From assembly GCF_032444005.1 (NCBI RefSeq), contig NC_091285.1, positions 516,274,001 to 516,338,000 of the forward strand: a stretch of 64,000 nucleotides of DNA, read 5' to 3'. The notes beneath the pieces were generated by a model. It had not been told where the DNA came from. It was given only the letters and a program-made list of their open reading frames with translations, and did no database searches. This stretch comes from Ranitomeya imitator (lineage: Eukaryota). A program made the position numbers and the translations under genes. Below, in pieces: positions 21,541-42,700 of this stretch. Each line of letters begins with the position of its first letter. The stretch's first letter is position 1.

Positions 21541-22098
21541 GCCAGGGTTATGCAAATATGAGAGAGCGGTGCTGTGCCTAGAAAAACACTCTTCTATCAC
21601 TAATCTGGCTCAACCTTGTATCCTATTATCTCCTTCTCTGCCTCTGCTTCACTTACACCTTCCCGGTGAGGTGCCCCCTCAAGGGTTAAAAAGTAGTCTT
21701 GTACGCCAGAAAATACAGTAATTCATTTGTGGTACAAATAGCTCAGGTGGTCCATACCTAGTCTGTAGGGCAGAGGGCTTGCAGGCCCATGATGTGTGGC
21801 TCGCGGCAATCTGCCAACTTAGTGCATTTGTACAAAGTCTAGCAAGCAACTAGAGGCCTTCAGATGGTGACTTTTGTTGAGTAACCTTGAACAGAAGAGC
21901 ACTTCTTGGTGCGCTAATACTGGCAGATTGAGGGTTAGCGGGGATAAATATGGTAAGCTGGAGATAGGATGATATTATTAGATAGAGGGGTGTTAAAACT
22001 GGATTAAATATTTCGCTGGGAGTGCTTCACGTTCCAAATAGGGGTAAATAAACCCCTGGATACAAGTCTTCTGCCTATAAGTGAGGGGGCACAAGGAA

Positions 22099-22575
22099 TA
22101 TACTCACCCTCGGACGCGCCCTGCTTCTTTCCGGCAGCCTTCCTTCCTAAGAATCAGCGCTTGCAAGACCTTGCGGTGACGTCGCGGCTTGTGATTGGTC
22201 GCGCGAGCGGTCACATGGGCGGTCGCGCGACCAATCACAAGCTGCGACGTCACCGCAAGGTCCTGCAAGCGCTGATTCGAAGGAAGGAAGGTTCCCGGTT
22301 AGTACCAGGGCGCGTCCAAGGGTGAGTATAGCGATATTTTTTATTTTAATTCTTTATTTTACACTTAAATATGGATCGCAGGGCCTGAAGGAGAGTTTCC
22401 TCTCCTTCAGACCCTGGGAACCATTGGAAACCCAATGCACTGCATTGGGTTTCGAGTTTCGGCCGACCCCGACATTTTTATAGGATCGGCCGATTTCACT
22501 CGACCCGACTTTTGAAAAAGTCTGGTTTCGTGAAACCCGACCCGATCCTATAAAAGTAAAAGTCGCTCAACCCTA
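22099..22575 (-). mobile_element. Truncated relative of the large hAT: one terminus plus a 232-bp palindrome
   Basis: Ends CGCTCAACCCTA (22575); ~140 bp is collinear with the reverse complement of 27504-27645; palindrome 22099-22330; no second TIR or TSD. Confidence 0.75.
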
Positions 22576-26799: not shown

Positions 26800-27503
26800 G
26801 GCTAAATTTAGGGTTAGGGTTGGGGCTAAATTTAGGGTTAGGCTTCTTTCACACTTACGTCAGTACGGGGCCGTCGCAATGCATCGGCCCGACATACCGA
26901 CACACGTTGTGAAAATTGTGCACAACGTGGGCAGCGGATGCAGTTTTTCAACGCATACATACACACATACAAAAAAACGTTACATTGAACGTTTTTTTGT
27001 GCTGACGGTCCGCCAAAACACTGATCCAGTGCACGACAGACGCGACGTGTGGCCATCCGTCACGATCCGTCGGCAATACAAGTCTATGGGCAAAAAACGC
27101 ATCCTGCGGGCACATTTGCAGGATCCGTTTCTTGTCCAAAACGACGGATTGCGACGGATGCCAAACAACGCAAGTGTGAAAGTAGCCTTAGGGCTAGGGT
27201 TAGGGTTGGGGCTAAAGTTAGGGCTAGGGTTGGGGCTAAAGTTAGGGTTAGAGTTTGGATTAGGGTTAGGGTTTGGATTAGGGTTGGTATTAGGGTTAGG
27301 GTTGGCATTAGGGTTACACTTGGGATTAGGGTTAGGTTTGGGATTAGGGTTAAGGTTAGGGTTGTGATTAGGGGTGTATTGGGATTAGGGTTAGGTTTGA
27401 GGTTAGGGTTGAGATTAGGATTAGGGGTGTGTTGGATTTAGGGTTTTGATTAGGGTTATGGTTAGGGTTGACATTAGGGTTGTTTTGGGGTAAGGGTTGT
27501 GAT
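26800..27503 (+). repeat. Degenerate telomere-like (TTAGGG)n tract, left part
   Basis: TTAGGG with TTGGGG, CTAGGG and GCTAAA variants; continues at 40108. Confidence 0.9.
26841..27187. mobile_element. PIF/Harbinger-like MITE, 347 bp
   Basis: TIRs GGCTTCTTTCACAC / GTGTGAAAGTAGCC; TSD TTA (26838-40 / 27188-90). Confidence 0.82.
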
Positions 27504-29227
27504 TAGAGTTGAGCGACCTTGACCTTTTTAGAGTCGAGCCGGGTTTTGCGAAACCCGACTATGTCCAAAGTCGGGTCGAGTGAAATCGGCCGATTATGAC
27601 GTAAAGTCGGGATCGACCGAAACACGAAACCCAATGCAAGTCAATGGGGCAGCATAGTCGGCAGTGAGTGGGGGCCAGGAAAACACCTAGAGTGGCCATT
27701 TTAATGTCAAAACCATCCATTCTTCTTAATGAAGCTTGTCAAGCGTAATTTACCTTATAATAATTGGAAGGCATTTGAAATTGGGGGTCATTTGGCTAAA
27801 GTTGTGGGGGGTAGGGCTGGTTCAAGTAATTAGTGGGCCCAGGAAATCTGGACCACGTCACGGCAGTGGAGCAGGGAGAGGTAAGTATTTCAACTTTGCA
27901 AGTGCTGTGAACCTGAGCAAGCAGGGGGGGCCCACTCGTTGGCATTGGCACTGGCACAGGGCCCCTCAAAGTACAGCGGTGTGTTTGCACGGTGGGGGCG
28001 CCTCCCACCGGCAGCAACACTTTTGCGTACTATGAGAGGCCCTGTGCCAGTGACGTCGCCAACTAGTATTCCTCCCCCCACCTGATGAAGGAACCTGCAC
28101 TTTCATCTGCACCTTCCTCTTTGTCCCCGTGTAAGGTGGTATGGTATGCGGGAAGAGCAACCTGACTTTCAGCAGGGTCACAATGTTGTTGTGTAGCGTG
28201 CACGGGGAATGTTGCGTTATGGGTCAATGTACCAGCAGACTCATCTATCACTGGCTGGGCAATGGGCACGATGAAGTGGAAACACAGATATAGGCCCAAA
28301 GAAGAAAGTGGGCTAAATGCAGTTCAAAATTGGTAACACAGGAATAACCAGGGGGCATTGCAGTGGAGGACAACTGGAATGAGAGGCTGACACAGAGAGT
28401 AGGGCCAAATCAGTAAGTAGTCGAAATGCAGTTCAAAATTGGCAACCGTAGTAAACAGGCGGCACAGCTTTGTTCAGTGGAGGAGAACAGCAAGGAGTGG
28501 CAGACACCGATAGTAGGCCCCAAACCAACTAGTACGCCAAATGCAGTTGTTCCATTTAACCACAATTTAATGAGAGCCTGAAGATAGAAGCTCAGGAAAG
28601 GCAACCTGGGGAACACCTTGGAGTGTAACACACCATCTCTCTACACCCCATACCCAATTTGAAGGCCTAATGCAGAGTAGTTTCCAAGAACTACTAAACG
28701 AGAGCCGGAAGATCGAAGCTCAGGAAAGGCAACCTGGGGAACACCTTGGAGTGTAACACAACGTCTCTCTACACGACGGAAGGGCTGATTCTTAGGAAGG
28801 AAGGCTGTTGGAAATAAGCATTGCGCGTCCGAGGGTGATTATATTCTTATTAGGTATATACTCACCCTCGGACGCGCCCTGCTTCTTTATTTGGAATGAA
28901 TGTTTATTTGCAATGTGGTGTTGACTTTCTCTATTATTTTGGTAATTAATGATTTTATTATTTTCATTATTTTGCATCTTCTCGGCAATAATATAAAGAA
29001 GACGCGACAGGACAACACTCGGTGGATGCCATATGTGTGTTTTCAATTTAAAAAAACTTTCAGTTAACTACTTGCAGGAGAAAGTAATTGTAGCTGGTGG
29101 CCATTTTTAGTACTGTACCAGATTTTAGTTGTGTGTTTGTTTTTAATGTTAAAATGTCTGCATTTGATATCTCACCAGTATTTTCTTTTTTATAAGCAAA
29201 ATACTTATTTTTATATTTTCTGATGTT

Positions 29228-30538
29228 GGTTCCAGGGGTACACGGCCAGCAGTGCCCTGGTCAGTGTAGTAGTAGTTGAAAGAATGGACCGCAGACAGGC
29301 ATCGAAGGCCTAAAATAATAACACATGGCTGTAGGCAATTTTAAATTGGTTCCAGGGGTACACGGACAGCAGTGGTGTGGTCAGTGGAGGCCTAGTGGAA
29401 GGAGTGACCGCAGACAGGCATCGAAGGCCTAAAATAATAACACATGGCTGTAGGCAATTTTAAATTGGTTCCAGGGGTACACGGACAGCAGTGGTGTGGT
29501 CAGTGGAGGCCTAGTGGAAGGAGTGACCGCAGACAGGCATCGAAGGCCTAAAATAATAACACATGGCTGTAGGCAATTTTAAATTGGTTCCAGGGGTACA
29601 CGGACAGCAGTGGTGTGGTCAGTGGAGGCCTAGTGGAAGGAGTGACCGCAGACAGGCATCGAAGGCCTAAAATAATAACACATGGCTGTAGGCAATTTTA
29701 AATTGGTTCCAGGGGTACACGGACAGCAGTGACCTGGTCAGTGTAGTAGTAGTTGAAAGAATGGACCGCAGACAGGCATCGAAGGCCTAAAATAAAAAAA
29801 TTGGGCTGGCTGTAGGCAATTTTAAATTGGTTCCAGGGGTACACGGGCAGCAGTGACCTGGTCAGTGTAGTAGTAGTTGAAAGAATGGACCGCAGACAGG
29901 CTTAGAAGGCCTAACATAACAAACTTGGGCTGGCTGTAGGCACTTTTAAATTGGTTCCAGGGGTACACGGGCAGCAGTGGTCTGGTCAGTGGAAGTCTAG
30001 TGGAAGGAGTGACCGCAGACAGGCTTCCAAGGCCTAACATAACAAACTTGGGCTGGCTGTAGGCACTTTTAAATTGGTTCCAGGGGTACACGGGCAGCAG
30101 TGGTCTGGTCAGTGGAAGTCTAGTGGAAGGAGTGACCGCAGACAGGCTTCCAAGGCCTAACATAACAAACTTGGGCTGGCTGTAGGCACTTTTAAATTGG
30201 TTCCAGGGGTACACGGGCAGCAGTGGTCTGGTCAGTGGAAGTCTAGTGGAAGGAGTGACCGCAGACAGGCTTCGAAGGCCTAACATAACAAAATTGGGCT
30301 GGCTGTAGGCACTTTAAATTGGTTCCAGGGGTACATGGGCAGCAGTGTATGGTCAGTGGAAGTCTAGTGGAAGGAGTGACGGCAGACAGTCTTCGAAGGC
30401 CTAACATAACAAAATTGGGCTGACTGTAGGCACTTTTAAATTGGTTCCAGGGTAACACGGCCAGCAGTGGCCTGGTCAGTGTAGTAGTTGTAGAAAGAAG
30501 GGACCGCAGACAGGCTTCGAAGGCCTAACATAACAAAA
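29228..30538. repeat. ~120-bp tandem array inside the hAT (11 copies, 119-124 bp)
   Basis: GGTTCCAGGGGTACAC recurs at 29228, 29348, 29467, 29586, 29705, 29829, 29953, 30076, 30199, 30321, 30443. Confidence 0.95.
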
Positions 30539-30997
30539 ATGTCAAAACAATGGTATTGTCAGTGCCAGGCATTGAAGGATGTCAGCGGCTAGACTACACA
30601 TTGGTGAAGCTGTGAGAGATAATTTTGCTAGTGGTAGAGCACTGTTTGAGCTGGGGGGGGGAACTGTCTTGTGGCCGGCGGTACAGGCACAGGGCCCCTC
30701 ATATTACAACGGTGTGTCTGACGTTGGGTGCGCACCACCACCGCCAGAGACACTTTATTGTACTATGAGGGACCCAGTGGCAGTGCCGTCGACCAAAAGC
30801 GGCCACACCCACCTCTTCAGACAAACAGCACTCTCAAGGGTCCAAGCGCAAAGTGGCGATAGCACGGCCCCGTGTGGGGAGTTTGGCCATTTCGTGAGGT
30901 GGAAACATGTCGTATGCTGGACAATCAGGTGAAGAAAATTACGAGATTGGAAAAGTCATTCAGAATAGTCCACAGGCAAGACCTTTTCATAGGAAAG

Positions 30998-33900
30998 CTA
31001 GGTGTCAGCCGGGCAGGGTGGGGCAAAAGATTTTGAAATCCAGTTGTGGTTCATTTTAATGAAGGTTAGATCATCTACATTTTGGGTAGCCAGACGAGTC
31101 CTTTTTTCTGTTAGTATTGAACCTGCAGCACTGAATACTCTTTCTGATAGGACACTAGCTGCCGGGCAAGCAAGCTCCTGCAATGCATATTCTGCCAATT
31201 CTGGCCAGGTGTCTAATTTGGATGCCCAGTAATCAAATGGGAATGACGGTTGAGGGAGAACGTCGATAAGGGATGAAAAATAGTTTGTAACCATACTGGA
31301 CAAATGTTGTCTCCTGTCACTTTGAATTGATGCTGCAGTACCTGTCCTGTCTGCGGTCATAGAAAAATCACTCCACAACCTGGTCAGAAAACCCCTCTGT
31401 CCAACGCCACTTCTGATTTCTGCCCCTCTAACACCTCTGGTCTGCTGGCCCCTGGAGCTTGTGTGAGAACGATCACGGGCGCTGTGTGCAGGGAATGCCA
31501 GAAGCAAACGGTCAACAAGAGTTGATTGTTTTGTTGCTAATATTAGTTCCAAGTTCTCATGTGGCATAATATTTTGCAATTTGCCTTTATAGCGAGGATC
31601 AAGGAGGCAGGCCAACCAGTAATCGTCATCGTTCATCATTTTTGTAATGCGTGTGTCCCTTTTGAGGATACGCAAGGCATAATCCGCCATGTGGGCCAAA
31701 GTTCCCGTTGTCAAATCTGCGGTTGTGCTTGGTTGAGGGGCAGTTGCAGGCAAATCTACGTCACTTGTGTCCCTCAAAAAACCAGAACCCGGCCTTGCCA
31801 CGCCACCAATTTCCCGTGCCCCCGGGAAAGCTTCCTCATTAAAAATATACTCATCCCCATCATCCTCCTCATCCTCCACCTCCTCTTCGCCCGGTACCTC
31901 GTCATGTACACTGCCCTGACCAGACAATCGCTGACTGTCATCAAGGCTTTCCTCTTCCTCTGGTGCAGACGCCTGATCCTTTATGTGCGTCAAACTTTGC
32001 ATCAGCAGACGCATTAGGGGGATGCTCATGCTTATTATGGCGTTGTCTGCACTAACCAGCCGTGTGCATTCCTCAAAACACTGAAGGACTTGACACATGT
32101 CTTGAATCTTCGACCACTGCACACCTGACAACTCCATGTCTGCCATCCTACTGCCTGCCCGTGTATGTGTATCCTCCCACAAAAACATAACAGCCCGCCT
32201 CTGTTCGCACAGTCTCTGAAGCATGTGCAGTGTTGAGTTCCACCTTGTTGCAACGTCTATGATTAGGCGATGCTGGGGAAGGTTCAAAGAACGCTGATAG
32301 GTCTGCATACGGCTGGAGTGTACAGGCGAACGGCGGATATGTGCGCAAAGTCCACGCACTTTGAGGAGCAGGTCGGATAACCCCGGATAACTTTTCAGGA
32401 AGCACTGCACCACCAGGTTTAAGGTGTGAGCCAGGCAAGGAATGTGTTTCAGTTGGGAAAGGGAGATGGCAGCCATGAAATTCCTTCCGTTATCACTCAC
32501 TACCTTGCCTGCCTCAAGATCTACAGTGCCCAGCCACGACTGCGTTTCTTGCTGCAAGAACTCGGACAGAACTTCCGCGGTGTGTCTATTGTCGCCCAAA
32601 CACTTCATAGCCAATACAGCCTGCTGACGTATGCCAGTAGCTGCCCCATAATGGGAGACCTGGTGTGCAACAGTGGCAGGTGCGGATGGAGTGTTTGTGC
32701 GACTGCGGTCTGTGGACGAGCTCTTGCTTCTGCAGGAGGACGAGGAGGAGGAGGAGGAGGGGGTGCGAACGGCTACAGACAACTGTTTACTAGACCGTGG
32801 GCTAGGCAGAACTGTCCCAAACTTGCTGTCCCCTGTGGACCCTGAATCCACCACATTTACCCAGTGTGCCGTGATGGACACGTAACGTCCCTGGCCATGC
32901 CTACTGGTCCATGCATCTGTTGTCAGGTGCACCTTTGTGCTCACAGATTGCCTGAGTGCATGGACGATGCGCTCTTTAACATGCTGGTGGAGGGCTGGGA
33001 TGGCTTTTCTGGAAAAAAAGTGTCGACTGGGTAGCTCGTAGCGTGGTACAGCGTAGTCCATCAGGTCTTTGAAAGCTTCGCTTTCAACTAACCGGTAGGG
33101 CATCATCTCTAACGAGATTAGTCTAGCTATGTGGGCGTTCAAACCCTGTGTACGCGGATGCGAGGCTAAGTATTTCCTTTTTCTAACCATAGTCTCATGT
33201 AGGGTGAGCTGGACTGGAGAGCTGGAGATCGTGGAACTAGCGGGGGTGCCGGTGGACATGGCAGACTGAGAGACGGTGGGAGATGGTATTGTTGCCGCCG
33301 GTGCCCTAGATGCAGTGTTTCCTACTACGAAACTGGTGATTCCCTGACCCTGACTGCTTTGGCCTGGCAAAGATACCTGCACAGATACAGCAGGTGGTGC
33401 GCTAAATGGTGGTCCTACACTGCCGGAAGGGATGTTGCGTTGATGACTAGCTTCATTGGCCGAGGGTGCAACAACCTTAAGGGACGTTTGGTAGTTAGTC
33501 CAAGCTTTCAAATGCATGGTGGTTAAATGTCTATGCATGCAACTAGTATTGAGACTTTTCAGATTCTGACCTCTGCTTAAGGAAGTAGAACATTTTTGAC
33601 AGATGACTTTGCGCTGATCAATTGGATGTTGTTTAAAAAAATGCCAGACTGCACTCTTTCTAGCATCGGATACCTTTTCAGGCATTGCAGACTGAGCTTT
33701 AACCGGATGGCCACGCTGTCCTCCACCAGGTTTTGGCTTTGCCACGCGTTTTGGGCAAGATACGGGCCCGGCAGATGGAACCTGTGGCGATGTTGATGCC
33801 TGCTGCGACCCCTCCTCCTCCTCTGCTTCAGAACTGCTGCCGCCTGCACCCTGTTCCCCCAATGGCTGCCAATCGGGGTCAAGAACTGGGTCATCTAATA

Positions 33901-34573
33901 ACTCTTCTTGTACCTCCTGCGCAACTTCGTCTGTGTCACCGTGTCGTTCGGTGGTATAGCGTTCGTGATGGGGCAACATAGTCTCATCAGGGTCTGATTC
34001 TTGATCAGCACCCTGCGAGGGCAATGTTGTGGTCTGAGTCAAAGGACCAGCATAGTAGTCTGGCTGTGGCTGTGCGTCAGTGCACTCCATGTCAGATTCA
34101 ATTTGTAATGGGCATGGACTGTTAACTGCTTCACTTTCTAAGCCAGGGACGGTATGTGTAAAGAGCTCCATGGAGTAACCCGTTGTGTCGCCTGCTGCAT
34201 TCTTCTCTGTTGTTGTTTTTGCTGAAGAGGACAAGGAAGTGACTTGTCCCTGACCGTGAACATCCACTAACGACGCGCTGCTTTTACTTTTACCAGTTTC
34301 ACGAGATGAGGCAAAAGAGCTAGAGGCTGAGTCAGCAAGATAAGCCAAAACTTGCTCTTGCTGCTCCGGCTTTAAAAGCGGTTTTCCTAATCCCAGAAAA
34401 GGGAGCGTTCGAGGCCTTGTGTAGCCGGACGACGAACCTGGCTCCACAGCTCCAGACTTAGGTGCAATATTTTTTCCCCCACGACCACCTGATGCTCCAC
34501 CACTACCACTACCCTCATTACCAGCTGACAATGAACGCCCCCGGCCACGACCTCTTCCACTAGACTTCCTCAT
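30998..34573 (-). CDS. hAT transposase (ZBED-like: BED zinc finger, DDE RNase H core, hATC dimerization domain), 1191 aa
   Basis: BED finger VWHFF...CQKC...MHRHLTTMH; catalytic LTTDAW, VVSDNG and SVLSERVFS; CLAH (CxxH) and TRWNS motifs; uninterrupted ORF. Confidence 0.95.
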   Translation of the reverse strand: MRKSSGRGRGRGRSLSAGNEGSGSGGASGGRGGKNIAPKSGAVEPGSSSGYTRPRTLPFLGLGKPLLKPEQQEQVLAYLADSASSSFASSRETGKSKSSASLVDVHGQGQVTSLSSSAKTTTEKNAAGDTTGYSMELFTHTVPGLESEAVNSPCPLQIESDMECTDAQPQPDYYAGPLTQTTTLPSQGADQESDPDETMLPHHERYTTERHGDTDEVAQEVQEELLDDPVLDPDWQPLGEQGAGGSSSEAEEEEGSQQASTSPQVPSAGPVSCPKRVAKPKPGGGQRGHPVKAQSAMPEKVSDARKSAVWHFFKQHPIDQRKVICQKCSTSLSRGQNLKSLNTSCMHRHLTTMHLKAWTNYQTSLKVVAPSANEASHQRNIPSGSVGPPFSAPPAVSVQVSLPGQSSQGQGITSFVVGNTASRAPAATIPSPTVSQSAMSTGTPASSTISSSPVQLTLHETMVRKRKYLASHPRTQGLNAHIARLISLEMMPYRLVESEAFKDLMDYAVPRYELPSRHFFSRKAIPALHQHVKERIVHALRQSVSTKVHLTTDAWTSRHGQGRYVSITAHWVNVVDSGSTGDSKFGTVLPSPRSSKQLSVAVRTPSSSSSSSSCRSKSSSTDRSRTNTPSAPATVAHQVSHYGAATGIRQQAVLAMKCLGDNRHTAEVLSEFLQQETQSWLGTVDLEAGKVVSDNGRNFMAAISLSQLKHIPCLAHTLNLVVQCFLKSYPGLSDLLLKVRGLCAHIRRSPVHSSRMQTYQRSLNLPQHRLIIDVATRWNSTLHMLQRLCEQRRAVMFLWEDTHTRAGSRMADMELSGVQWSKIQDMCQVLQCFEECTRLVSADNAIISMSIPLMRLLMQSLTHIKDQASAPEEEESLDDSQRLSGQGSVHDEVPGEEEVEDEEDDGDEYIFNEEAFPGAREIGGVARPGSGFLRDTSDVDLPATAPQPSTTADLTTGTLAHMADYALRILKRDTRITKMMNDDDYWLACLLDPRYKGKLQNIMPHENLELILATKQSTLVDRLLLAFPAHSARDRSHTSSRGQQTRGVRGAEIRSGVGQRGFLTRLWSDFSMTADRTGTAASIQSDRRQHLSSMVTNYFSSLIDVLPQPSFPFDYWASKLDTWPELAEYALQELACPAASVLSERVFSAAGSILTEKRTRLATQNVDDLTFIKMNHNWISKSFAPPCPADT

Positions 34574-34859
34574 TGTTTTAAAAACGTAACCAAACTAACG
34601 TTATTTGTTGCAGTCACACAACTTACACGGTGAGCTATAACTTCAGTATGATTTAGCTACCCCTTTACAGGTTGGTGAGACCACAGCGAAAATCAGGCCC
34701 AATGTTACACACTCTTTTTTTGGTGGCTGCAAATTAGAGAGATGCCCCACACGCAGGACTGTCACTGAAGCACAAATGTTAATATTAATGTCACACTATT
34801 ATTTTTTTTTTATTTTTATTTTTTTCAGGAACACTTTAGAAACCCCCCCAAAAAAAAAA

Positions 34860-35157
34860 AATAGATTTTTGCAGGGAGAATTTAGAAAACAAATGTAACA
34901 AACTATATGCTTTCTATGGGCCACTGAGTGAGAGATGACGCACACAGGAATCAGGAGTGGCACACAAGCCCAGAGGCCAATATTTTTCTACCAATGATTG
35001 ATGGAGTTATTTTCTCTGGTAGATTTTGGAACCCAAATCAAGGAAAAAAAATGTAGGCTTTCTATGGACCACAATTGGAGAGAGAGAGAGAGAGAGATGG
35101 CACACCCAGGAGTCAAGACTGGCACACAAGCAGAAAGGCCAATATTAATCTCCCACT

Positions 35158-35191
<34 letters not shown>

Positions 35192-35482
35192 CAGGGAGAC
35201 TTTAGAAAAAAAAATAATAAAAAAAATATGATTTTATCAGGAAGAATTTAGAAACCAAATAAAATAAAATGATTTTTTCAGGGAGAATTTATAAAACAAA
35301 TAAAAACAAAAATAGGCGTTCTATGGCCCACTGACTGAGAGATGACGCACACAGGAGTCAGGAGTGGCACACAAACCCAGAGGCCAATATTTTTCTACCA
35401 ATGATTGATGTAGTTATTTTCTCTGGTAGATTTTAGAACCCAAATCAAGGAAAAAAAATATAGGCTTTCTATGGACCACAAT

Positions 35483-35527
<45 letters not shown>

Positions 35528-36134
35528 CACCCAGGAGTCAAGACTGGCACACAAGCAGAAAGGCCAATATTAATCTCCCACTGTTTTTTTTGGTTGTTTT
35601 TTTTTTTTTTTTTTCAGGGAGACTTTAGAAAAAAAAATAATAAAAAAAATATGATTTTATCAGGAAGAATTTAGAAACCAAATAAAATAAAATGATTTTT
35701 TCAGGGAGAATTTATAAAACAAATAAAACCAAAAATAGGCGTTCTATGGCCCACTGACTGAGAGATGACGCACCCAGGAGTCAAGACTGGCACACAAGCA
35801 GAAAGGCCAATATTAATCTCCCACTGTTTTTTTTTTTTTTTTTCAGGGAGACTTTAGAAAAAAAAATAATAAAAAAAATATGATTTTATCAGGAAGAATT
35901 TAGAAACCAAATAAAATAAAATGATTTTTTCAGGGAGAATTTAGAAAACAAATAAAACCAAAAATAGGCGTTCTATGGCCCACTGACTGAGAGATGACGC
36001 ACACAGGAGTCAGGAGTGGCACACAAACCCAGAGGCCAATATTTTTCTACCAATGATTGATGTAGTTATTTTCTCTGGTAGATTTTAGAACCCAAATCAA
36101 GGAAAAAAAATATAGGCTTTCTATGGACCACAAT

Positions 36135-36179
<45 letters not shown>

Positions 36180-39100
36180 CACCCAGGAGTCAAGACTGGC
36201 ACACAAGCAGAAAGGCCAATATTAATCTCCCACTGTTTTTTTGGTTGTTTTTTTTTTTTTTTTTTCAGGGAGACTTTAGAAATAAAAATAATAAAAAAAA
36301 TATGATTTTATCAGGAAGAATTTAGAAACCAAATAAAATAAAATGATTTTTTCAGGGAGAATTTAGAAAACAAATAAAACCAAAAATAGGCGTTCTATGG
36401 CCCACTGACTGAGAGAGAGAGAGAGATGGAACGCTTAGTACTGACACACAAGCCCAAAGGGCAATATTAATCTCCCTTTTTTTTTCCAGGGAGAATTTCT
36501 AAAACCCAAAAAAAAAATAAAATAGGCTTTCTATGGCCCACTATTTGTGAGAGAGATGGGACGCTCAGGACTGGCACAGATGGCACGCTCAGGACTGGCA
36601 CAGAAGCCCAGAGGCCAATATTAATCTCCCTTTTTTTCTGGGAGAATTTATAAAACCAAAAAAATATTTAAATAGGCTTTCTATGGCCCACTATTTGTGA
36701 GAGAGATGGCACGCTCAGGACTGGCACAGATGGCACGCTCACAACTGGCACACAAGCCCAGAGGCCAATATTAATCTCCCTTTTTTCAGGGAAAATTTAT
36801 AAAACAAAAAAAAAAATTAAATAGGCTTTCTATGGCCCACTATTTGTGAGAGAGATGGCACGCTCAGGGCTGGCACAGATGGCACGCTCAGGACTGGCAC
36901 ACAAGCCCAGAGGCCAATATTAATCTCCCTTTTTTTCAGGGAGAATTTATAAAACCCCCAAAAAAAATAAAATAGGCTTTCTATGGCCCACTATTTGTGA
37001 GAGAGATGGGACGCTCAGGACTGGCACAGATGGCACGCTCAGGACTGGCACAGAAGCCCAGAGGCCAATATTAATCTCCCTTTTTTTCTGGGAGAATTTA
37101 TAAAACCAAAAAAATATTTAAATAGGCTTTCTATGGCCCACTATTTGTGAGAGAGATGGCACGCTCAGGACTGGCACAGATGGCACGCTCACAACTGGCA
37201 CACAAGCCCAGAGGCCAATATTAATCTCCCTTTTTTCAGGGAGAATTTCTAAAACCCAAAAAAAAAAAAAATAGGCTTTCTATGGCCCACTATTTGTGAG
37301 AGAGATGGGACGCTCAGGACTGGCACAGATGGCACGCTCAGGACTGGCACAGAAGCCCAGAGGCCAATATTAATCTCCCTTTTTTTCTGGGAGAATTTAT
37401 AAAACCAAAAAAATATTTAAATAGGCTTTCTATGGCCCACTATTTGTGAGAGAGATGGCACGCTCAGGACTGGCACAGATGGCACGCTCACAACTGGCAC
37501 ACAAGCCCAGAGGCCAATATTAATCTCCCTTTTTTCAGGGAAAATTTATAAAACAAAAAAAAAAATTAAATAGGCTTTCTATGGCCCACTATTTGTGAGA
37601 GAGATGGCACGCTCAGGGCTGGCACAGATGGCACGCTCAGGACTGGCACACAAGCCCAGAGGCCAATATTAATCTCCCTTTTTTTCAGGGAGAATTTATA
37701 AAACCCCCCAAAAAAATAAAATAGGCTTTCTATGGCCCACTATTTGTGAGAGAGATGGGACGCTCAGGACTGGCACAGATGGCACGCTCAGGACTGGCAC
37801 AGAAGCCCAGAGGCCAATATTAATCTCCCTTTTTTTCTGGGAGAATTTATAAAACCAAAAAAATATTTAAATAGGCTTTCTATGGCCCACTATTTGTGAG
37901 AGAGATGGCACGCTCAGGACTGGCACAGATGGCACGCTCACAACTGGCACACAAGCCCAGAGGCCAATATTAATCTCCCTTTTTTCAGGGAGAATTTCTA
38001 AAACCCAAAAAAAAAATAAAATAGGCTTTCTATGGCCCACTATTTGTGAGAGAGATGGGACGCTCAGGACTGGCACAGATGGCACGCTCAGGACTGGCAC
38101 AGAAGCCCAGAGGCCAATATTAATCTCCCTTTTTTTCTGGGAGAATTTATAAAACCAAAAAAATATTTAAATAGGCTTTCTATGGCCCACTATTTGTGAG
38201 AGAGATGGCACGCTCAGGACTGGCACAGATGGCACGCTCACAACTGGCACACAAGCCCAGAGGCCAATATTAATCTCCCTTTTTTCAGGGAGAATTTCTA
38301 AAACCCCAAAAAAAAATAAAATAGGCTTTCTATGGCCCACTATTTGTGAGAGAGATGGGACGCTCAGGACTGGCACAGATGGCACGCTCAGGACTGGCAC
38401 AGAAGCCCAGAGGCCAATATTAATCTCCCTTTTTTTCTGGGAGAATTTATAAAACCAAAAAAATATTTAAATAGGCTTTCTATGGCCCACTATTTGTGAG
38501 AGAGATGGCACGCTCAGGACTGGCACAGATGGCACGCTCACAACTGGCACACAAGCCCAGAGGCCAATATTAATCTCCCTTTTTTCAGGGAAAATTGATA
38601 AAACAAAAAAAAAAATTAAATAGGCTTTCTATGGCCCACTATTTGTGAGAGAGATGGCACGCTCAGGGCTGGCACAGATGGCACGCTCAGGACTGGCACA
38701 CAAGCCCAGAGGCCAATATTAATCTCCCTTTTTTTCTGGGAGAATTTATAAAACCAAAAAAATATTTAAATAGGCTTTCTATGGCCCACTATTTGTGAGA
38801 GAGATGGCACGCTCAGGACTGGCACAGATGGCACGCTCACAACTGGCACACAAGCCCAGAGGCCAATATTAATCTCCCTTTTTTCAGGGAAAATTTATAA
38901 AACAAAAAAAAAAATTAAATAGGCTTTCTATGGCCCACTATTTGTGAGAGAGATGGCACGCTCAGGGCTGGCACAGATGGCACGCTCAGGACTGGCACAC
39001 AAGCCCAGAGGCCAATATTAATCTCCCTTTTTTTCAGGGAGAATTTATAAAACCAAAAAAAAAAATAAATAGGCTTTCTATGGCCCACTATTTGTGAGAG

Positions 39101-39300
39101 AGATGGCACACTCAGGACTGGCACACAAGCCCAAAGGCCAATATTAATCTCCCACTGTATTTTTATCAGGGAGAATTTATACACCCCACAAAAAAAAATA
39201 CAGAAAAATGAAAAGGCTTTCTATGGCCCACTATGTGAGAGAGATGGCACACACAGGGATGGCACTCTAGCAGAAATGCCAAATTGCCAATCTTAATCTC
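34860..39300. repeat. Composite satellite array in the hAT: longer mixed units (34860-36440), then ~19 copies of a ~150-bp unit
   Basis: ATAGGCTTTCTATGGCCCAC recurs every 149-151 bp from 36521 to ~39070; embedded (GA)n and poly-A/T tracts. Confidence 0.95.
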
Positions 39301-39799
39301 CCACCAAAAAAAAAAAAAAAAAAAAAACAGGGAATGTCCTACAATTACTATCTCCCTGCCTGCAGTAATCTCAGCCAGGTATGGCAGGCAGCTACTATCT
39401 CCCTGCCTGCAGTAATCTCAGCCAGGTATGGCAGGCAGCAATAAGGAGTGGACTGATGCACAAATGAAATAAAAAGTGTGGACAAACAAAAAAGATAGCT
39501 GTGCAGAAAGGAAGGAACAAGAGGATTTGTGCTTTGAAAAAAGCAGTTGGTTTGCACAGCGGCGTACACACAGCAATGCAGCTATCAGGGAGCCTTCTAG
39601 GGCAGCCCAATGAGCTACAGCGCTGAGGGGAAAAAAAAAAAAAAAAAAACTTCCACTGTCCCTGCACACCGAGGGTGGTGTTGGACAGTGCAAATCGCTG
39701 CAGCACAAGCGGTTTTGTGGTTAATGGACCCTGCCTAACGCTATCCCTGCTTCTGACAAAGCGGCAGCAACCTCTCCCTAAGCTCAGATCAGCAGCAGT

Positions 39800-39944
39800 A
39801 AGATGGCGGTCGGCGGGAACGCCTCTTTATAGCCCCTGTGACGTCGCAGACAGCAAGCCAATCACTGCAATGCCCTTCTCTAAGATGGTGGGGACCAGGA
39901 CCTATGTCATCACGCTGCCCACACTCTGCGTTTACCTTCATTGG
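39800..39944 (-). promoter_or_regulatory. Putative Pol II promoter of the hAT transposase
   Basis: Minus-strand order: CCAAT (39940-44), inverted CCAAT (39858-62), CRE-like CGACGTCA (39839-46), TATA CTATAAAG (39825-32), YY1-like CCGCCATCTT (39800-09) at the expected start site; motif-only evidence. Confidence 0.55.
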
Positions 39945-40107
39945 CTGAGAAATGGCGCTTTTCGCGTCATTGAAACGCGACTTTGGCGCGAAAGTCGCGT
40001 ACCGCATGGCCGACCCCGCACAGGGGTCGGATCGGGTTTCATGAAACCCCGACTTAGCCAAAAGTCGGCGACTTTTGAAAATGTTCGACCCGTTTCGCTC
40101 AACCCTA

Positions 40108-40205
40108 GTTGTGATTATGGTTAGGGTTAGTGATTAGGATTATGGATCAGGTTGGAATTAGGGTTAGGGGTGTGTTGGGGTTAGGGTTGGAGCTAGAATT
40201 GGGGG
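40108..40205 (+). repeat. Degenerate telomere-like tract, right part
   Basis: TTAGGG/TTGGGG variants continuing after the hAT TSD. Confidence 0.8.
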
Positions 40206-42700
40206 GTTTCCACTGTTTAGGTACATCAGGGGGTCTCCAAACACGATAGCCAATTTTGCGCTCAAAACATCAAATGGTGCTCCCTCCCTTCTGAGCTCTG
40301 CCGTGTGCCCAAACAGTGGGTTACCCCCACATATGGGGCATCAGCATACTCGGGATAAATTGGACAACAACTTCTGGGGTCCAATATCTCTTGTTACCCT
40401 TGTGAAAATAAAAACTTGGGGGCTACAAAATCCTTTTTGTTGAAAAATATATATATATTTTTTTATGACTCTGCATTATAAACTTCTGTGAAGCACTTGG
40501 GCATTCAAAGTTCTCACCACACATCTATATAAGTTCCTTGGGGGGTCTAGTTTCCAAAACGGGGTCACTTGTGGGGGGTTACTACTGTTTAGGTACATCA
40601 GGGGCTCTGCAAACGCAACATAACGCCCACAGACCATTCTATCTAAGTCTGCATTCCAAAACGGCGCTCCTTCCCTTCCGAGCTCTGCCGTGCGCCCAAA
40701 CAGTGGTTTACCCCCACATATGGGGCATCAGCATACTCAGGATAAATTGGACAACAACTTCAGTGGTCCAATTTATCCTGTTACCCTTGTGAAAATAAAA
40801 ACTTGGGGGCTACAATATCTTTTTTGTGAAAAAAAAAAAAATATTTTTTATTTTCACGACTCTGCATTCTAAACTTCTGTGAAGCACTTGGGCATTCAAA
40901 GTTCTCACCACACATCTAGATAAGTTCCTTGGGTGGTCTAGTTTCCAAAATGGGGTCACTTGTGGGGGTTACTACAGTTTAGGTACATCAGGGGCTCTGC
41001 AATCGCAACATAATGCCCACAGACCATTCTATCAAAGTCTGCATTCCAAAAAGGCGCTCCTTCCCTTCCGAGCTCTGCCGTGCGCCCAAACAGTGGTTTA
41101 CCCCCACATATGGTGCATCAGCATACTCGGGATAAATTGGACAACAACTATTGCAGTCCAATTTCTCCTGTTACCCTTGTGAAAATAAAAACTTGGGGGC
41201 TACAATATCTTTTTTGTGGAAAAAAAAATATTTTTTATTTTCACGACTCTGCATTCTAAACTTCTGTGAAGCACTTGGGCATTCAAAGTTCTCACCACAC
41301 ATCTAGATAAGTTCCTTGGGGGGTCTAGTTTCCAAAATGGGGTCACTTGTGGAGGGTTTCTACTGGTTAGGTACATCAGGGGCTCTGCAAACGCAACATA
41401 ATGCCCGTAGACCATTCTATCAAAGTCTGCATTCCAAAACGGCGCTCCTTCCTTCCGAGCTCTGCCGTGCGCCCAAACAGTGGTTTACCCCCACATATGG
41501 GGTACCAGCATACTCAGGACAAATTGGACAACAATAAGTTCCATGGGGGGTCTAGTTTCCAAAATGGGGTCACTTGTGGGGGATTTCTACTGTTTAGGCA
41601 CATCAGGGGCTCTCCAAACGCGACATGGCATCCGATCTCAATTCCAGCCAATTCTACATTGAAAAAGTAAAACGGCACTCTTTCTCTTCCAAGCTCTGCG
41701 GTGCGCCCAAACAGTGGTTTACCCCCACATATTGGGTATCGACGTACTCAGGAGAAATTGCACAACAACATTAGTGGTCTAATTTTTCCTGTTACCCTTG
41801 TGAAAATAAAAATTTGTGGGCAAAAAGATCATTTTTGTAGAAAAAATGCGATTTTTTTTTTCACGGCTCTACGTTATAAACTTCTGTGAAGCACATGGGG
41901 GTTTAAAGTGCTCACCACACATCTAGATAAGTTCCTTAAGGGGTCTAGTTTCCAAAATGGTGTCACTTGTGGGGGGTTTCCACTGTTAAGGCATCAGGGG
42001 CTCTCCAAACGCGACATGGTGTCCAATCTCAATTCCAGCCAATTCTACATTGAAAAAGTAAAACGGCGCTCCTTCACTTCCAAGCTCTGCCATGCGCCCA
42101 AACAGTGGTTTACCCTCACATATGGGGTATCGACGTATTCAGGAGAAATCGCACAACAACTTTTGTGGTCTAATTTCTCCTGTTACCCTTGTGAAAATAA
42201 GAATTTGTGGGCGAAAAGATCATTTTTGTGTAAACAAAAGCGATTTTTTTATTTTCACGGCTCTACGTTATAAACTTCTGTGAAGCACTTGGGGGTTCAA
42301 AGTGCTCACCACACATCTAGATAAGTTCCTTAAGGGGTCTAGTTTCCAAAATGTTGTCACTTGTGGGGAGTTTCCACTGTTTAGGCACATCAGGGGCTCT
42401 CTAAACGTAACATGGCGTCCGATCTCAATTCCAGCCAATTCTCCATTGAAAAAGTCAAACGGCGCTCCTTCACTTCTAAGTTCTGCGGTGCGCCCAAAAA
42501 GTGGTTTACCCCCACATATCGGGTATTGGCGTATTCAGGAGAAATTGCGTAACAAAATTTATGGTTACATTTCTGTTTTTACACTTGTGAAAATAAAAAA
42601 AATGGTTCTGAATTAAGATGTTTGCAAAAAAAAGTTAAATGTTCATTTTTTCCTTCCACATTGTTTCAGTTCCTGTGAAGCACATAAAGGGTTAATAAAC
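40200..42700. repeat. ~390-bp diverged tandem repeats in the piggyBac-like element
   Basis: GGGTCTAGTTTCCAAAA...GTCACTTGTGGGG near 40543, 40935, 41321, 41549, 41941, 42335 (one shortened unit). Confidence 0.85.

What the first reader, a model, noticed from the sequence alone, without database searches (positions are those of the whole stretch)
34574..39832. A ~5.2-kb AUG-free leader between the hAT promoter and the transposase start codon
Seen by line-by-line manual scan: no CAT on the plus strand (no ATG on the transposase sense strand) from the start codon (34571-73) up past the TATA box; the next is at ~39908, upstream of the promoter core. The opposite strand has abundant ATGs, and the 120-bp array on the 3' side of the gene has sense ATGs in its units. 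Even counting only ~1.5 kb of non-redundant sequence, about 20 would be expected by chance. Inference: the satellite-filled interval is a retained, giant 5' UTR purged of upstream AUGs, so array expansion is constrained by translation and array length might tune transposase output. The sense strand is rich in poly-U and UC tracts. Caveats: sense AATAAA motifs near 34805-34820 and a possible acceptor at 34727 allow an intron model, though an intron would not need AUG purging.
Basis: partly seen in the sequence, partly recalled or inferred. Interest (0 to 1): 0.85.

Follow-up and report, generated by a model that had tools for sequence, protein, structure and literature searches.

The report
Start-codon-free 5-kb leader in frog transposon
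A jumping gene in a poison-frog genome has 5.3 kb of mostly repeated DNA between its likely promoter and its transposase start codon without one ATG on the coding strand, and two related frog transposon lineages show the same pattern, so upstream start codons are probably selected against, though no transcript evidence yet shows the whole stretch is in the mRNA.

Summary
The + strand has no CAT (sense ATG) from 34574 to 39907. This 5,334-nt tract starts at the start codon of an intact 1,191-aa BED/hAT transposase. It ends about 75 nt upstream of a TATA box. ATG is the only trinucleotide missing on the sense strand.

Most of the tract is young tandem array. Real complexity is about 1.5 kb, and only about 0.8-1.0 kb has no internal relative. 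Those 811 nt alone should hold about 12 ATGs (P about 7e-6).

New evidence comes from two related hAT lineages (43% and 35% protein identity). Both carry unrelated tandem arrays directly upstream of the homologous start codon, again with almost no ATG. Twenty outgroup hATs show normal ATG density.

Selection against upstream AUGs in a transcribed leader is the best reading. However, the 150-bp array is only three unit variants, so it is ATG-free by descent. Nothing shows that array growth is constrained or tunes output.

The RNA-library contigs could not tell a retained 5.2-kb leader from a spliced one or from internal transcription starts.

This is a new variant of a known kind. Interest is moderate to high.

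The parts
27496..27503 (.). Target-site duplication GTTGTGAT, left copy
   Evidence: Read directly. It is identical to 40108-40115.
27504..27515 (+). Terminal inverted repeat at the 3' end of the element (TAGAGTTGAGCG)
   Evidence: 11 of 12 bases match the reverse complement of the other end.
29226..30537 (-). 119-bp tandem array (10.8 copies) downstream of the transposase gene. It serves as an internal control because it does contain sense ATGs.
   Evidence: tandem repeat finder; 16 sense ATG in 1,312 nt.
30998..34573 (-). Intact transposase ORF, 1,191 aa, with BED zinc finger and hAT dimerisation domain. The start codon is at 34573-34571, in the context AAACAATGA.
   Evidence: M1 and the hAT catalytic and signature residues (D553, D694, C713/H716, R777/W778, E1144) are invariant in an 8-sequence alignment.
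34574..34735 (-). ATG-proximal part of the leader with no relative elsewhere in the tract. It holds a GTAAGT donor-like site at 34626.
34736..36423 (-). Higher-order tandem array, about 650-bp period built from 162-245-nt units, with (TC)n and poly-T tracts. It has 0 sense ATG.
36424..39125 (-). 150-bp tandem array of 18 copies, made of only three unit variants (a, b, c). It has 0 sense ATG.
39126..39330 (-). Unit copies at the distal edge of the arrays. The most distal one (anchor at 39302) is strongly diverged from the array consensus and may mark the leader segment from which the arrays grew (inferred).
   Evidence: unit u606 aligns with many differences and a 16-nt gap.
39331..39804 (-). 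Distal unique leader, from the predicted start site A39804 down to the arrays. It includes a 47-bp direct duplication at 39346-39439. It has 0 sense ATG.
39826..39831 (-). TATAAA box. An Inr-like CCATCTT with A at 39804 lies 27 nt downstream. A CRE-like CGACGTCA is at 39846-39839, and CCAAT motifs are at 39944-39940 and (inverted) 39862-39858.
   Evidence: Read directly. Promoter function is inferred, not tested.
39908..39910 (-). First sense ATG upstream of the tract. Four more follow within the next 135 nt (39939, 39968, 40005, 40040).
40096..40107 (-). Terminal inverted repeat at the 5' end of the element (TAGGGTTGAGCG), followed by subterminal AAGTCG-type repeats
40108..40115 (.). Target-site duplication GTTGTGAT, right copy

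Best explanation
The tract is the 5' leader of the transposase mRNA of an intact, recently active 12.6-kb hAT transposon (27504-40107) in a Ranitomeya poison frog. The proposed mechanism has four steps.

1. Transcription starts about 27 nt downstream of the TATA box, near 39804 (inferred).
2. Ribosomes load at the cap and scan. The transposase AUG at 34573 is the first AUG they meet, because every upstream AUG has been kept out of the roughly 1.5 kb of distinct leader sequence (the selection is shown statistically, the mechanism is inferred).
3. The arrays grew by tandem amplification of a segment of this already AUG-free leader, so they inherited the property. They are too young to have been tested much by selection themselves (shown for the 150-bp array).
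4. Array sequence must reach translated mRNAs at least some of the time. Three lineages with unrelated arrays all keep them nearly AUG-free, while arrays on the 3' side of the same element are not (shown as a pattern, the link to mRNA content is inferred).

Whether the usual mRNA carries all 5.2 kb or a variable part of it is open.
For: The ATG gap is exact and strand- and triplet-specific. Non-redundant sequence alone expects about 12 ATG and has 0, with 0/5000 shuffles for the 649-nt distal part. The boundaries coincide with the start codon and a TATA/Inr/CRE/CCAAT promoter, and 5 sense ATGs lie in the 200 nt just upstream. A family variant that creates an ATG sits exactly at the predicted start site, 39804-39802, and none of the other listed variants inside the leader creates one.

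Homologues. L001 (43% identical protein) has 684 nt of a 306-nt tandem unit and 0 ATG against 8.9 expected. L087, from the same lineage, has 2 ATG against 16.6 expected in 1,166 nt, both private point changes giving 3- and 5-codon uORFs. L003/L086 (35%) have 274 nt of a 137-nt unit running up to the true start codon and 0 ATG. The three arrays share no detectable similarity. Downstream flanks and CDS of the same contigs have normal ATG density.

Controls. Twenty outgroup hAT ORFs have 284 ATG against 323 expected in the upstream 1 kb, with a median ATG-free run of 82 nt and a maximum of 261 nt. The 3' array of the same element has 16 sense ATGs.

Other points. Canonical poly(A) signals are scarce on the sense strand (2 AATAAA, 0 ATTAAA) against 24 + 4 of their complements. 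There is no strong splice donor on the start-site side. Contigs from three RNA-labelled studies run collinear through 34643-34949 and 39128-39270, with no splice joint listed. Long leaders can be scanned: the 913-nt LINE-1 leader is scanned cap-dependently, and length as such is not limiting (PMC6769788).
Against: There is no direct transcript evidence. The laid data are short assembler contigs of a very high-copy family. They cover the DNA upstream of the predicted start site and even run into flanking DNA, so they may be genomic carry-over or read-through. The start site is predicted from motifs only.

The arrays' lack of ATG needs no ongoing selection. The 150-bp array is three variants, and the diversification test is over-dispersed. 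Acceptor-like sites are abundant, including 34727 and 34765, so removal of the arrays as an intron is possible.

Two AATAAA motifs lie 240 nt before the start codon. A transposase acts in trans, so selection on any single copy's leader is weak. One homologous copy (L087) does carry two uAUGs. Homologue contigs end inside their arrays, so their promoters and full leader lengths are unknown, and their source organisms are not named.
Confidence: 0.55

Rival explanations
1. 5'-UTR intron model. Only the unique ends (about 39804-39300 and about 34730-34574) are exonic and kept AUG-free by selection. The arrays lie in an intron that is always spliced out. They lack ATG only because they were amplified recently from an AUG-free piece of the old leader.
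For: The 150-bp array is three unit variants with almost no private mutations, so descent alone explains its lack of ATG. The whole interval 39155-34736 is related by self-BLAST to the most distal unit copies. Acceptor-like sites with pyrimidine tracts lie at 34727 and 34765, and inside the L003 unit. The diversification test is not cleanly significant.
Against: The start-site side has no good donor. The best are 4.7 and 4.2 bits on a consensus matrix, where the GTAAGT at 34626 scores 7.1. No splice joint appears in three RNA-labelled runs, and their contigs cross 34727 unspliced (weak evidence). Three lineages with unrelated arrays would each have had to amplify an ATG-free unit: P is about 0.008 for the 306-nt unit and 0.08 for the 137-nt unit. 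In L003/L086 the array runs to within about 37 nt of the start codon. Unit types in the window differ at 154 states with no ATG created.
Confidence: 0.25
2. Dispersed-initiation ('ATG desert') or monomer-promoter model. Array units themselves start transcription, as mouse L1 5' monomers do. mRNAs then begin at many places, and the whole array must lack ATG so that every transcript yields transposase. No single mRNA needs a 5.2-kb leader.
For: ATG deserts are described for promoter regions with multiple start sites and are explained this way (PMC5580651, citing Lee et al. 2005). TATAAA occurs in 15 array units. Tandem units upstream of the first ORF recur in three lineages.
Against: The TATAAA is not conserved among unit types: it is TAGAAA in variant c and TCTAAA in most units of the 34.7-36.4 kb part. 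No Inr-like motif lies at the right distance (read). The unique 474 nt between the distal TATA box and the arrays is also ATG-free, which points to use of the distal promoter. Promoter activity could not be tested.
Confidence: 0.12
3. Chance or composition. A low-complexity, T-rich repeat happens to lack ATG.
For: About 80% of the tract is redundant. A single 150-nt unit lacks ATG by chance about 9% of the time (from the densities). Across a multi-gigabase scan, some ATG-free stretches of several hundred nt are expected somewhere.
Against: The non-redundant 811 nt expects about 12 ATG (P about 7e-6) and a 657-nt higher-order unit expects 9.5. ATG is the only absent triplet, while ATN and NTG triplets are common. 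The antisense strand has 106-109. The boundaries are the start codon and the promoter. The pattern is replicated in two lineages and absent in 20 outgroups and in the element's own 3' array.
Confidence: 0.01

Closest known systems
Long untranslated leader of the maize hAT element Activator (Ac)
   Same: Same superfamily. A long non-coding leader lies between a subterminal promoter and the transposase start codon. Shortening the Ac leader raised activity in Arabidopsis (PMC2921059, citing Lawson et al. 1994 and others), so leader length affects output there.
   Different: The Ac leader is roughly 0.65 kb (my recollection, not checked here) and is not built of tandem arrays. This leader would be about 8 times longer and about 80% array. 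Whether length affects output here is untested.
General depletion of upstream AUGs in eukaryotic 5' UTRs, and 'ATG deserts' around dispersed promoters (Lee et al. 2005, as summarised in PMC5580651)
   Same: Strand-specific lack of ATG between transcription start(s) and the start codon, explained by the need for the main AUG to be the first one met.
   Different: The scale is 5.3 kb (about 1.5 kb of distinct sequence) rather than tens to a few hundred nt. A TATA box sits at the distal boundary, whereas the review cited (PMC5580651) ties ATG deserts to dispersed promoter regions with multiple start sites. The host is a DNA transposon and the tract is filled by satellite-like arrays.
Tandem monomer arrays in the 5' UTR of mouse LINE-1 (established knowledge, not checked here)
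   Same: A mobile element whose region upstream of the first ORF is a variable-length tandem array of about 150-300-nt units.
   Different: L1 is a retrotransposon and its monomers are promoters that offset 5' truncation. Here the element is cut-and-paste, unit promoter activity is unknown, and the TATA-like motif is not conserved among unit types.
Human LINE-1 913-nt 5' UTR, translated by cap-dependent scanning (Dmitriev et al. 2007, via PMC6769788)
   Same: A transposable-element mRNA with an unusually long leader that ribosomes scan end to end. Length as such is reported not to be limiting.
   Different: It is about six times shorter and GC-rich, not array-based. No experimental data exist for the frog element.
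Giant array-carrying hAT elements noted elsewhere in this genome by this scan (s1-294801, s1-280605, s1-292466)
   Same: Same genome and superfamily, an intact transposase flanked by home-grown tandem arrays, high copy number.
   Different: Those notes concern size and array cargo. None reports the ATG-free state of arrays on the 5' side. I could not read those windows.

Membership tests
hAT superfamily autonomous transposon | 8-bp target-site duplication and short terminal inverted repeats | tested here: met
   GTTGTGAT at 27496-27503 and 40108-40115. The TIRs TAGAGTTGAGCG and TAGGGTTGAGCG match at 11 of 12 bases.
hAT superfamily autonomous transposon | Transposase with BED zinc finger, RNase-H-like DDE core with the CxxH and RW motifs, and a C-terminal hAT dimerisation domain | tested here: met
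   Pfam zf-BED 9.8e-10 and Dimer_Tnp_hAT 7.3e-11. D553, D694, E1144, C713/H716 and R777/W778 are invariant in alignment A1. The ORF is uninterrupted at 1,191 aa.
uAUG-purged 5' untranslated leader | Sense-strand ATG depletion beyond composition and redundancy | tested here: met
   0 ATG against about 12 expected in 811 non-redundant nt, with 0/5000 shuffles for the 649-nt part. ATG is the only absent triplet.
uAUG-purged 5' untranslated leader | The tract lies between the transcription start and the start codon | tested here: inconclusive
   The proximal boundary is the conserved start codon. The distal boundary is about 75 nt upstream of a TATA box with an Inr-like A 27 nt downstream. The start site is predicted, not mapped.
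uAUG-purged 5' untranslated leader | The tract is present in the mature, translated mRNA | tested here: inconclusive
   Contigs from RNA-labelled runs are collinear and unspliced through both ends of the tract. They also cover DNA upstream of the predicted start, so DNA carry-over cannot be excluded.
uAUG-purged 5' untranslated leader | The property is conserved in relatives | tested here: met
   L001, L087, L003 and L086: unrelated arrays upstream of the homologous start codon with 0, 2, 0 and 0 ATG. Twenty outgroup hATs are normal.
5'-UTR intron | Consensus donor near the start site, acceptor near the start codon, and a splice joint in RNA | tested here: inconclusive
   Donors on the start-site side are weak, at most 4.7 bits. 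Acceptor-like sites are present at 34727 and 34765. No such joint is listed for the RNA-labelled runs, but the data are short contigs.
ATG-desert / dispersed promoter class | Multiple dispersed start sites across the ATG-poor region | not testable with these tools
   This needs CAGE or 5'-RACE. A TATA box is present at the distal boundary, and the TATA-like motif inside units is not conserved.
L1-like promoter monomer array | Each tandem unit has promoter activity | not testable with these tools
   Only motif evidence is available. TATAAA is present in 15 array units and is replaced by TAGAAA or TCTAAA in others.

The most novel reading that the evidence does not exclude
The mature transposase mRNA of this frog hAT family carries the whole array-filled leader, 5.2 kb in this copy, and small ribosomal subunits scan all of it to reach the first AUG. 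That would be by far the longest AUG-free scanned leader I know of. Because the arrays expand and contract between copies, leader length would then be a fast-evolving, heritable dial on how much transposase each copy makes, a built-in self-limiting device of the transposon.
Probability: 0.2. Interest if true: 0.85.

Novelty: new variant of a known kind. Interest (0 to 1): 0.6.

Why it matters
Depletion of upstream AUGs is a known mark of scanned leaders, but not at this scale or in this setting. Here several kilobases of satellite-like array sit inside a DNA transposon, and the pattern recurs in three lineages with unrelated arrays.

If the arrays are in the mRNA, the element gives a natural series of AUG-free leaders of different lengths. 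That series could be used to ask how far a 40S subunit can scan in vivo and what length costs. It would also show that tandem-repeat growth inside a transposon is filtered by translation on one side of the gene and not on the other.

If the arrays are spliced out, the finding still marks a conserved leader architecture of anuran ZBED4/6-like hAT elements. It also gives a practical rule for spotting their expressed, autonomous copies.

Tried and rejected
1. Other genomic copies. BLAST of the element against the rest of the window found no second copy, only an 82% match of the 3' end at 22441-22575.

2. Transcript evidence. The single read-laying run returned only short assembler contigs of a very high-copy family. 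Depth is not bounded by the predicted start site and some contigs run into other flanks, so it cannot separate RNA from DNA carry-over.

3. Wider homologue searches. Scans of bacterial/archaeal genomes and of viral contigs found no relatives. The metagenome scan gave only distant hATs, with best-segment identity mostly 21-37%, which I used as controls. L004 and L005 have only 92 and 105 nt upstream and are uninformative. L002 (28% identity) has normal ATG density.

4. Test for ongoing purging inside the arrays. There were 0 ATG-creating states against 6.6 expected. The same calculation on all triplets gives observed/expected ratios from 0 to 4, so I do not rely on its nominal P of 8e-4. The analogous consensus-based test on the L001/L087 units was confounded by a chimeric consensus.

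5. RNA structure. Folds of three leader pieces are unremarkable, with z of -2.1, -1.1 and +0.5. This gives no sign of selection for an unstructured or an IRES-like leader.

6. Known RNA families. Rfam finds nothing in the leader.

7. Earlier scan notes. Searches by words and by sequence gave no note on ATG-free leaders.

8. Rejected: composition as the cause, and a promoter close to the start codon. No TATA-like motif is visible there, and such a promoter would leave the ATG-free 649 nt at the far end unexplained.


Full report
**Observation**

A direct count finds CAT on the + strand at 34571-34573, which is the transposase start codon read on the minus strand, and not again until 39908. The gap is 5,337 bp. 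The next-largest CAT gap in the whole 64-kb window is 560 bp, and the largest ATG gap is 450 bp. The same interval has 106 ATG on the + strand.

On the sense (minus) strand ATG is the only one of the 64 trinucleotides with a count of zero. The other rare ones all contain CpG. ATA, ATT and ATC (128, 185, 72) and GTG, CTG and TTG (174, 149, 128) are plentiful. The lack is therefore specific to the triplet and to the strand, and is not a matter of composition.

**What the surroundings are**

The tract lies inside a 12.6-kb hAT transposon at 27504-40107.
- It has terminal inverted repeats TAGAGTTGAGCG and TAGGGTTGAGCG and a perfect 8-bp target-site duplication GTTGTGAT. An earlier scan note (s1-294851) gave the same bounds.
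- It is inserted in a degenerate TTAGGG-like satellite.
- The ORF 34573-30998 encodes 1,191 aa with a BED finger and a hAT dimerisation domain.
- In an alignment with seven relatives, the first methionine and the catalytic and signature residues are invariant.
- The nearest proteins are Ranitomeya imitator and R. variabilis models at 83-100% identity.
- More distant relatives are 'ZBED4/6-like' models from Hyperolius, Leptodactylus, Bombina, Hyla and Anomaloglossus.

The window is therefore from a Ranitomeya poison frog, and the family is widespread in anurans.

The distal boundary of the tract carries promoter-like motifs.
- A TATAAA box sits at 39831-39826 on the sense strand.
- An Inr-like CCATCTT has its A at 39804, 27 nt downstream of the TATA box.
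- A CRE-like CGACGTCA is at 39846-39839, and there are two CCAAT motifs.
- Five sense ATGs lie in the 200 nt just upstream, from 39908 to 40040.

A start at 39804 would give a 5,231-nt leader. This start site is inferred from motifs only.

**Repeat anatomy and the proper null**

The tract is mostly tandem array.
- A 150-bp unit occurs 18 times at 36424-39125.
- An array of about 650-bp period at 34736-36423 is built from 162-245-nt units of the same family.
- Further unit copies lie at 39126-39330. The most distal one is strongly diverged.

Self-BLAST leaves only 967 nt with no earlier relative within the tract. The tract has 1,481 distinct 8-mers out of 5,327.

Dinucleotide-preserving shuffles give the following.
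- 39804-39156 (649 nt): 9.7 ATG expected, 0 seen, 0 of 5,000 shuffles reach zero.
- 34735-34574 (162 nt): 2.2 expected.
- These two together: Poisson P about 6.6e-6.
- One 657-bp higher-order unit: 9.5 expected, 0 of 5,000 shuffles.
- One 299-bp pair of 150-bp units: 4.7 expected, 17 of 5,000 shuffles.

Elsewhere in the element, sense ATG density is ordinary: 17/kb in the CDS, 12/kb in the 3' part and 25/kb just upstream of the promoter. The 119-bp array on the 3' side has 16 sense ATGs in 1.3 kb. Arrays in this element are therefore not ATG-free as such.

A genome-scale scan would find some ATG-free stretches of several hundred nt by chance. It would not find them on the right strand, exactly between a promoter and the start codon of an intact gene, and replicated as described next.

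**Relatives**

Four contigs from public assemblies carry full-length relatives with readable upstream DNA. Their source organisms are not named.
- L001 (43% identical protein) has 684 nt upstream, made of a 306-nt tandem unit. It has 0 ATG against 8.9 expected, and 20 CAT.
- L087 is from the same lineage. After 40 nt of sequencing adapter are removed, it has 1,166 nt, or 3.8 units. It has two ATGs against 16.6 expected. Both are private point changes in the two most distal units and give 3- and 5-codon uORFs. The 715 nt next to the start codon are ATG-free (1 of 5,000 shuffles).
- L003 and L086 (35% identity) have a 137-nt tandem unit that runs to within about 37 nt of the true start codon. 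That codon lies 25 codons upstream of the called start and gives MTGRGRPPRRGRRGRG, which matches the family's N-terminus. There is no ATG in 274 nt.

The three arrays show no detectable similarity to one another. At the level of one unit, P(0) is 0.008 for the 306-nt unit and 0.08 for the 137-nt unit. CDS and downstream flanks of the same contigs have normal ATG counts.

As a control, 20 distinct outgroup hAT ORFs from metagenome contigs have 284 ATGs against 323 expected in their upstream 1 kb. Their ATG-free runs before the start have a median of 82 nt and a maximum of 261 nt. A 28%-identical relative (L002) is also normal.

A tandem array directly upstream of the start codon that stays nearly free of ATG is therefore a trait of this anuran hAT clade. 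It is not a trait of hATs in general.

**How much of this is selection on the arrays themselves**

The 18-copy 150-bp array consists of three unit variants in a regular pattern with almost no private changes. It is very young and lacks ATG by descent.

Across all 27 units there are 154 distinct substitution states. About 6.6 of them would be expected to create an ATG, and none does. When the same calculation is run for every triplet, observed/expected ratios range from 0 to 4, and ATG ties for lowest with the CpG-bearing TCG. I treat this as suggestive only, with an empirical rank of about 1-2 in 48.

The claim that array expansion is constrained by translation is therefore not demonstrated in this copy. 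The better argument for it is the recurrence across lineages and the contrast with the 3' array.

**Is the tract in the mRNA?**

Nineteen runs hold the sequence. Runs labelled as RNA from three studies hold 50-72% of its sampled words. Laid on 34400-40150, three RNA-labelled runs and one run of unrecorded type (X14, probably DNA) gave only short assembler contigs, and the family is very high-copy.

In the RNA-labelled runs, contigs run collinear with the genome across 34643-34777 (through the acceptor-like site at 34727), 34750-34949, 39128-39270 and 39759-39929. No joint linking the distal leader to the region near the start codon is listed for them.

The same runs also cover 39968-40150, upstream of the predicted start, and some contigs continue into other flanks. 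Genomic carry-over or read-through cannot be excluded, and I count this evidence as inconclusive.

One detail fits the predicted start site. Among the family variants listed, the only one that creates a sense ATG is at 39802. It makes ATG at 39804-39802, exactly at the predicted cap site.

The run of unrecorded type (X14) shows many joints between different units, which suggests that array arrangement differs among copies. Such joints in repeats are unreliable.

**Sequence features bearing on the rival models**
- A consensus-matrix scan finds no good splice donor on the start-site side. The best scores are 4.7 and 4.2 bits, while acceptor-like sites are plentiful.
- The strongest donor-like site in the whole leader is GTAAGT at 34626, 52 nt before the start codon. 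A GGTGAGT lies 13 nt before the start codon in L001 and L087. I leave this unexplained.
- Canonical poly(A) signals are scarce on the sense strand (2 AATAAA, 0 ATTAAA) against 24 + 4 of their complements. This fits a strand that must be transcribed through, but redundancy makes the count weak.
- TATAAA occurs in 15 array units but is TAGAAA or TCTAAA in the other unit types. A promoter in every unit is therefore not supported by conservation.
- RNA folds of three leader pieces are unremarkable.
- Rfam finds nothing in the leader.

**Explanation**

The best-supported reading is that the interval is the 5' leader of the transposase mRNA and has been kept free of upstream AUGs, so that scanning ribosomes reach the transposase AUG first. 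The arrays grew out of leader sequence that was already AUG-free. Array sequence reaches translated mRNAs at least part of the time.

- Shown: the statistical signal, its boundaries, its recurrence and the controls.
- Inferred: the start site, retention in the mRNA, and scanning.

Published work shows that a 913-nt transposon leader (human LINE-1) is scanned cap-dependently and that length as such is not limiting (PMC6769788). Shortening the leader of the hAT element Ac raised its activity in Arabidopsis (PMC2921059). ATG-poor regions are explained by the need for one protein from several start sites (PMC5580651).

The main rival is a 5'-UTR intron that removes the arrays. A second rival is initiation inside the units. 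Chance is effectively excluded.

**Novelty and verdict**

Depletion of upstream AUGs is known. I found no description of a multi-kilobase, array-filled, AUG-free interval in a DNA transposon, recurring in three lineages with unrelated arrays, in the literature searches I ran.

I rate it a new variant of a known kind. Interest is 0.6, and the decisive experiment is long-read cDNA with 5'-end mapping.

Noticed in passing
window 34621-34632; L001:668-684 and L087:1190-1206: The strongest splice-donor-like site of the whole leader (CGT|GTAAGT) lies only 52 nt upstream of the transposase start codon. A GGTGAGT lies 13 nt upstream of the homologous start codon in the 43%-identity lineage. A donor here would remove the start codon. 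It may be chance or a regulatory splice.
   Followed up: partly
window 39802: A substantial fraction of family copies in the sequencing runs carry G>C here. That makes a sense ATG at 39804-39802, exactly at the predicted cap site 27 nt after the TATA box. It is the only listed leader variant that creates an ATG.
   Followed up: partly
window 22441-22575 and 22094-22162: There is an 82-97% match to parts of the 3' end region of the element (27504-27638 and about 28780-28888). This is probably the end of a related hAT or a non-autonomous derivative.
   Followed up: no
window 27440-27503 and 40108-40270: The element sits in a degenerate TTAGGG-like (telomere-like) satellite. Contigs in the runs join the left flank directly to the right flank (loose ends at 40108). 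This shows uninterrupted satellite units elsewhere, not necessarily an empty allele.
   Followed up: partly
window 28812-28888: A near-perfect 38-nt inverted repeat with a 1-nt loop lies in the 3' non-coding part of the element. It gives a weak, sub-threshold Rfam match to a plant miRNA family (27 bits against a gathering score of 75), which I take as chance.
   Followed up: no
window 40272-41534: A 387-bp tandem repeat (3.3 copies) lies just outside the 5' end of the element. It contains 41-nt inverted repeats (GGATAAATTGGACAACAAC...).
   Followed up: no
L087:1-40: The public contig begins with an Illumina adapter sequence (GTGACTGGAGTTCAGACGTGTGCTCTTCCGATCT). This is an assembly artefact, and I excluded it from the counts.
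   Followed up: yes
L003:275-349 and L086:138-212: The gene caller's start is 25 codons too far downstream. The in-frame ATG at L003:275 gives an arginine/glycine-rich N-terminus that matches the family (MTGRGRPPRRGRRGRG, against MRKSSGRGRGRGRS in the window).
   Followed up: yes
window 39805-40107 versus 34574-39804: The subterminal promoter region is CpG-rich, with repeated AAGTCG-type motifs that are also present at the other end (27520-27620) and are likely transposase-binding sites. The leader is strongly CpG-depleted (CGG, CGA and TCG occur 1-3 times).
   Followed up: no
   Followed up: no
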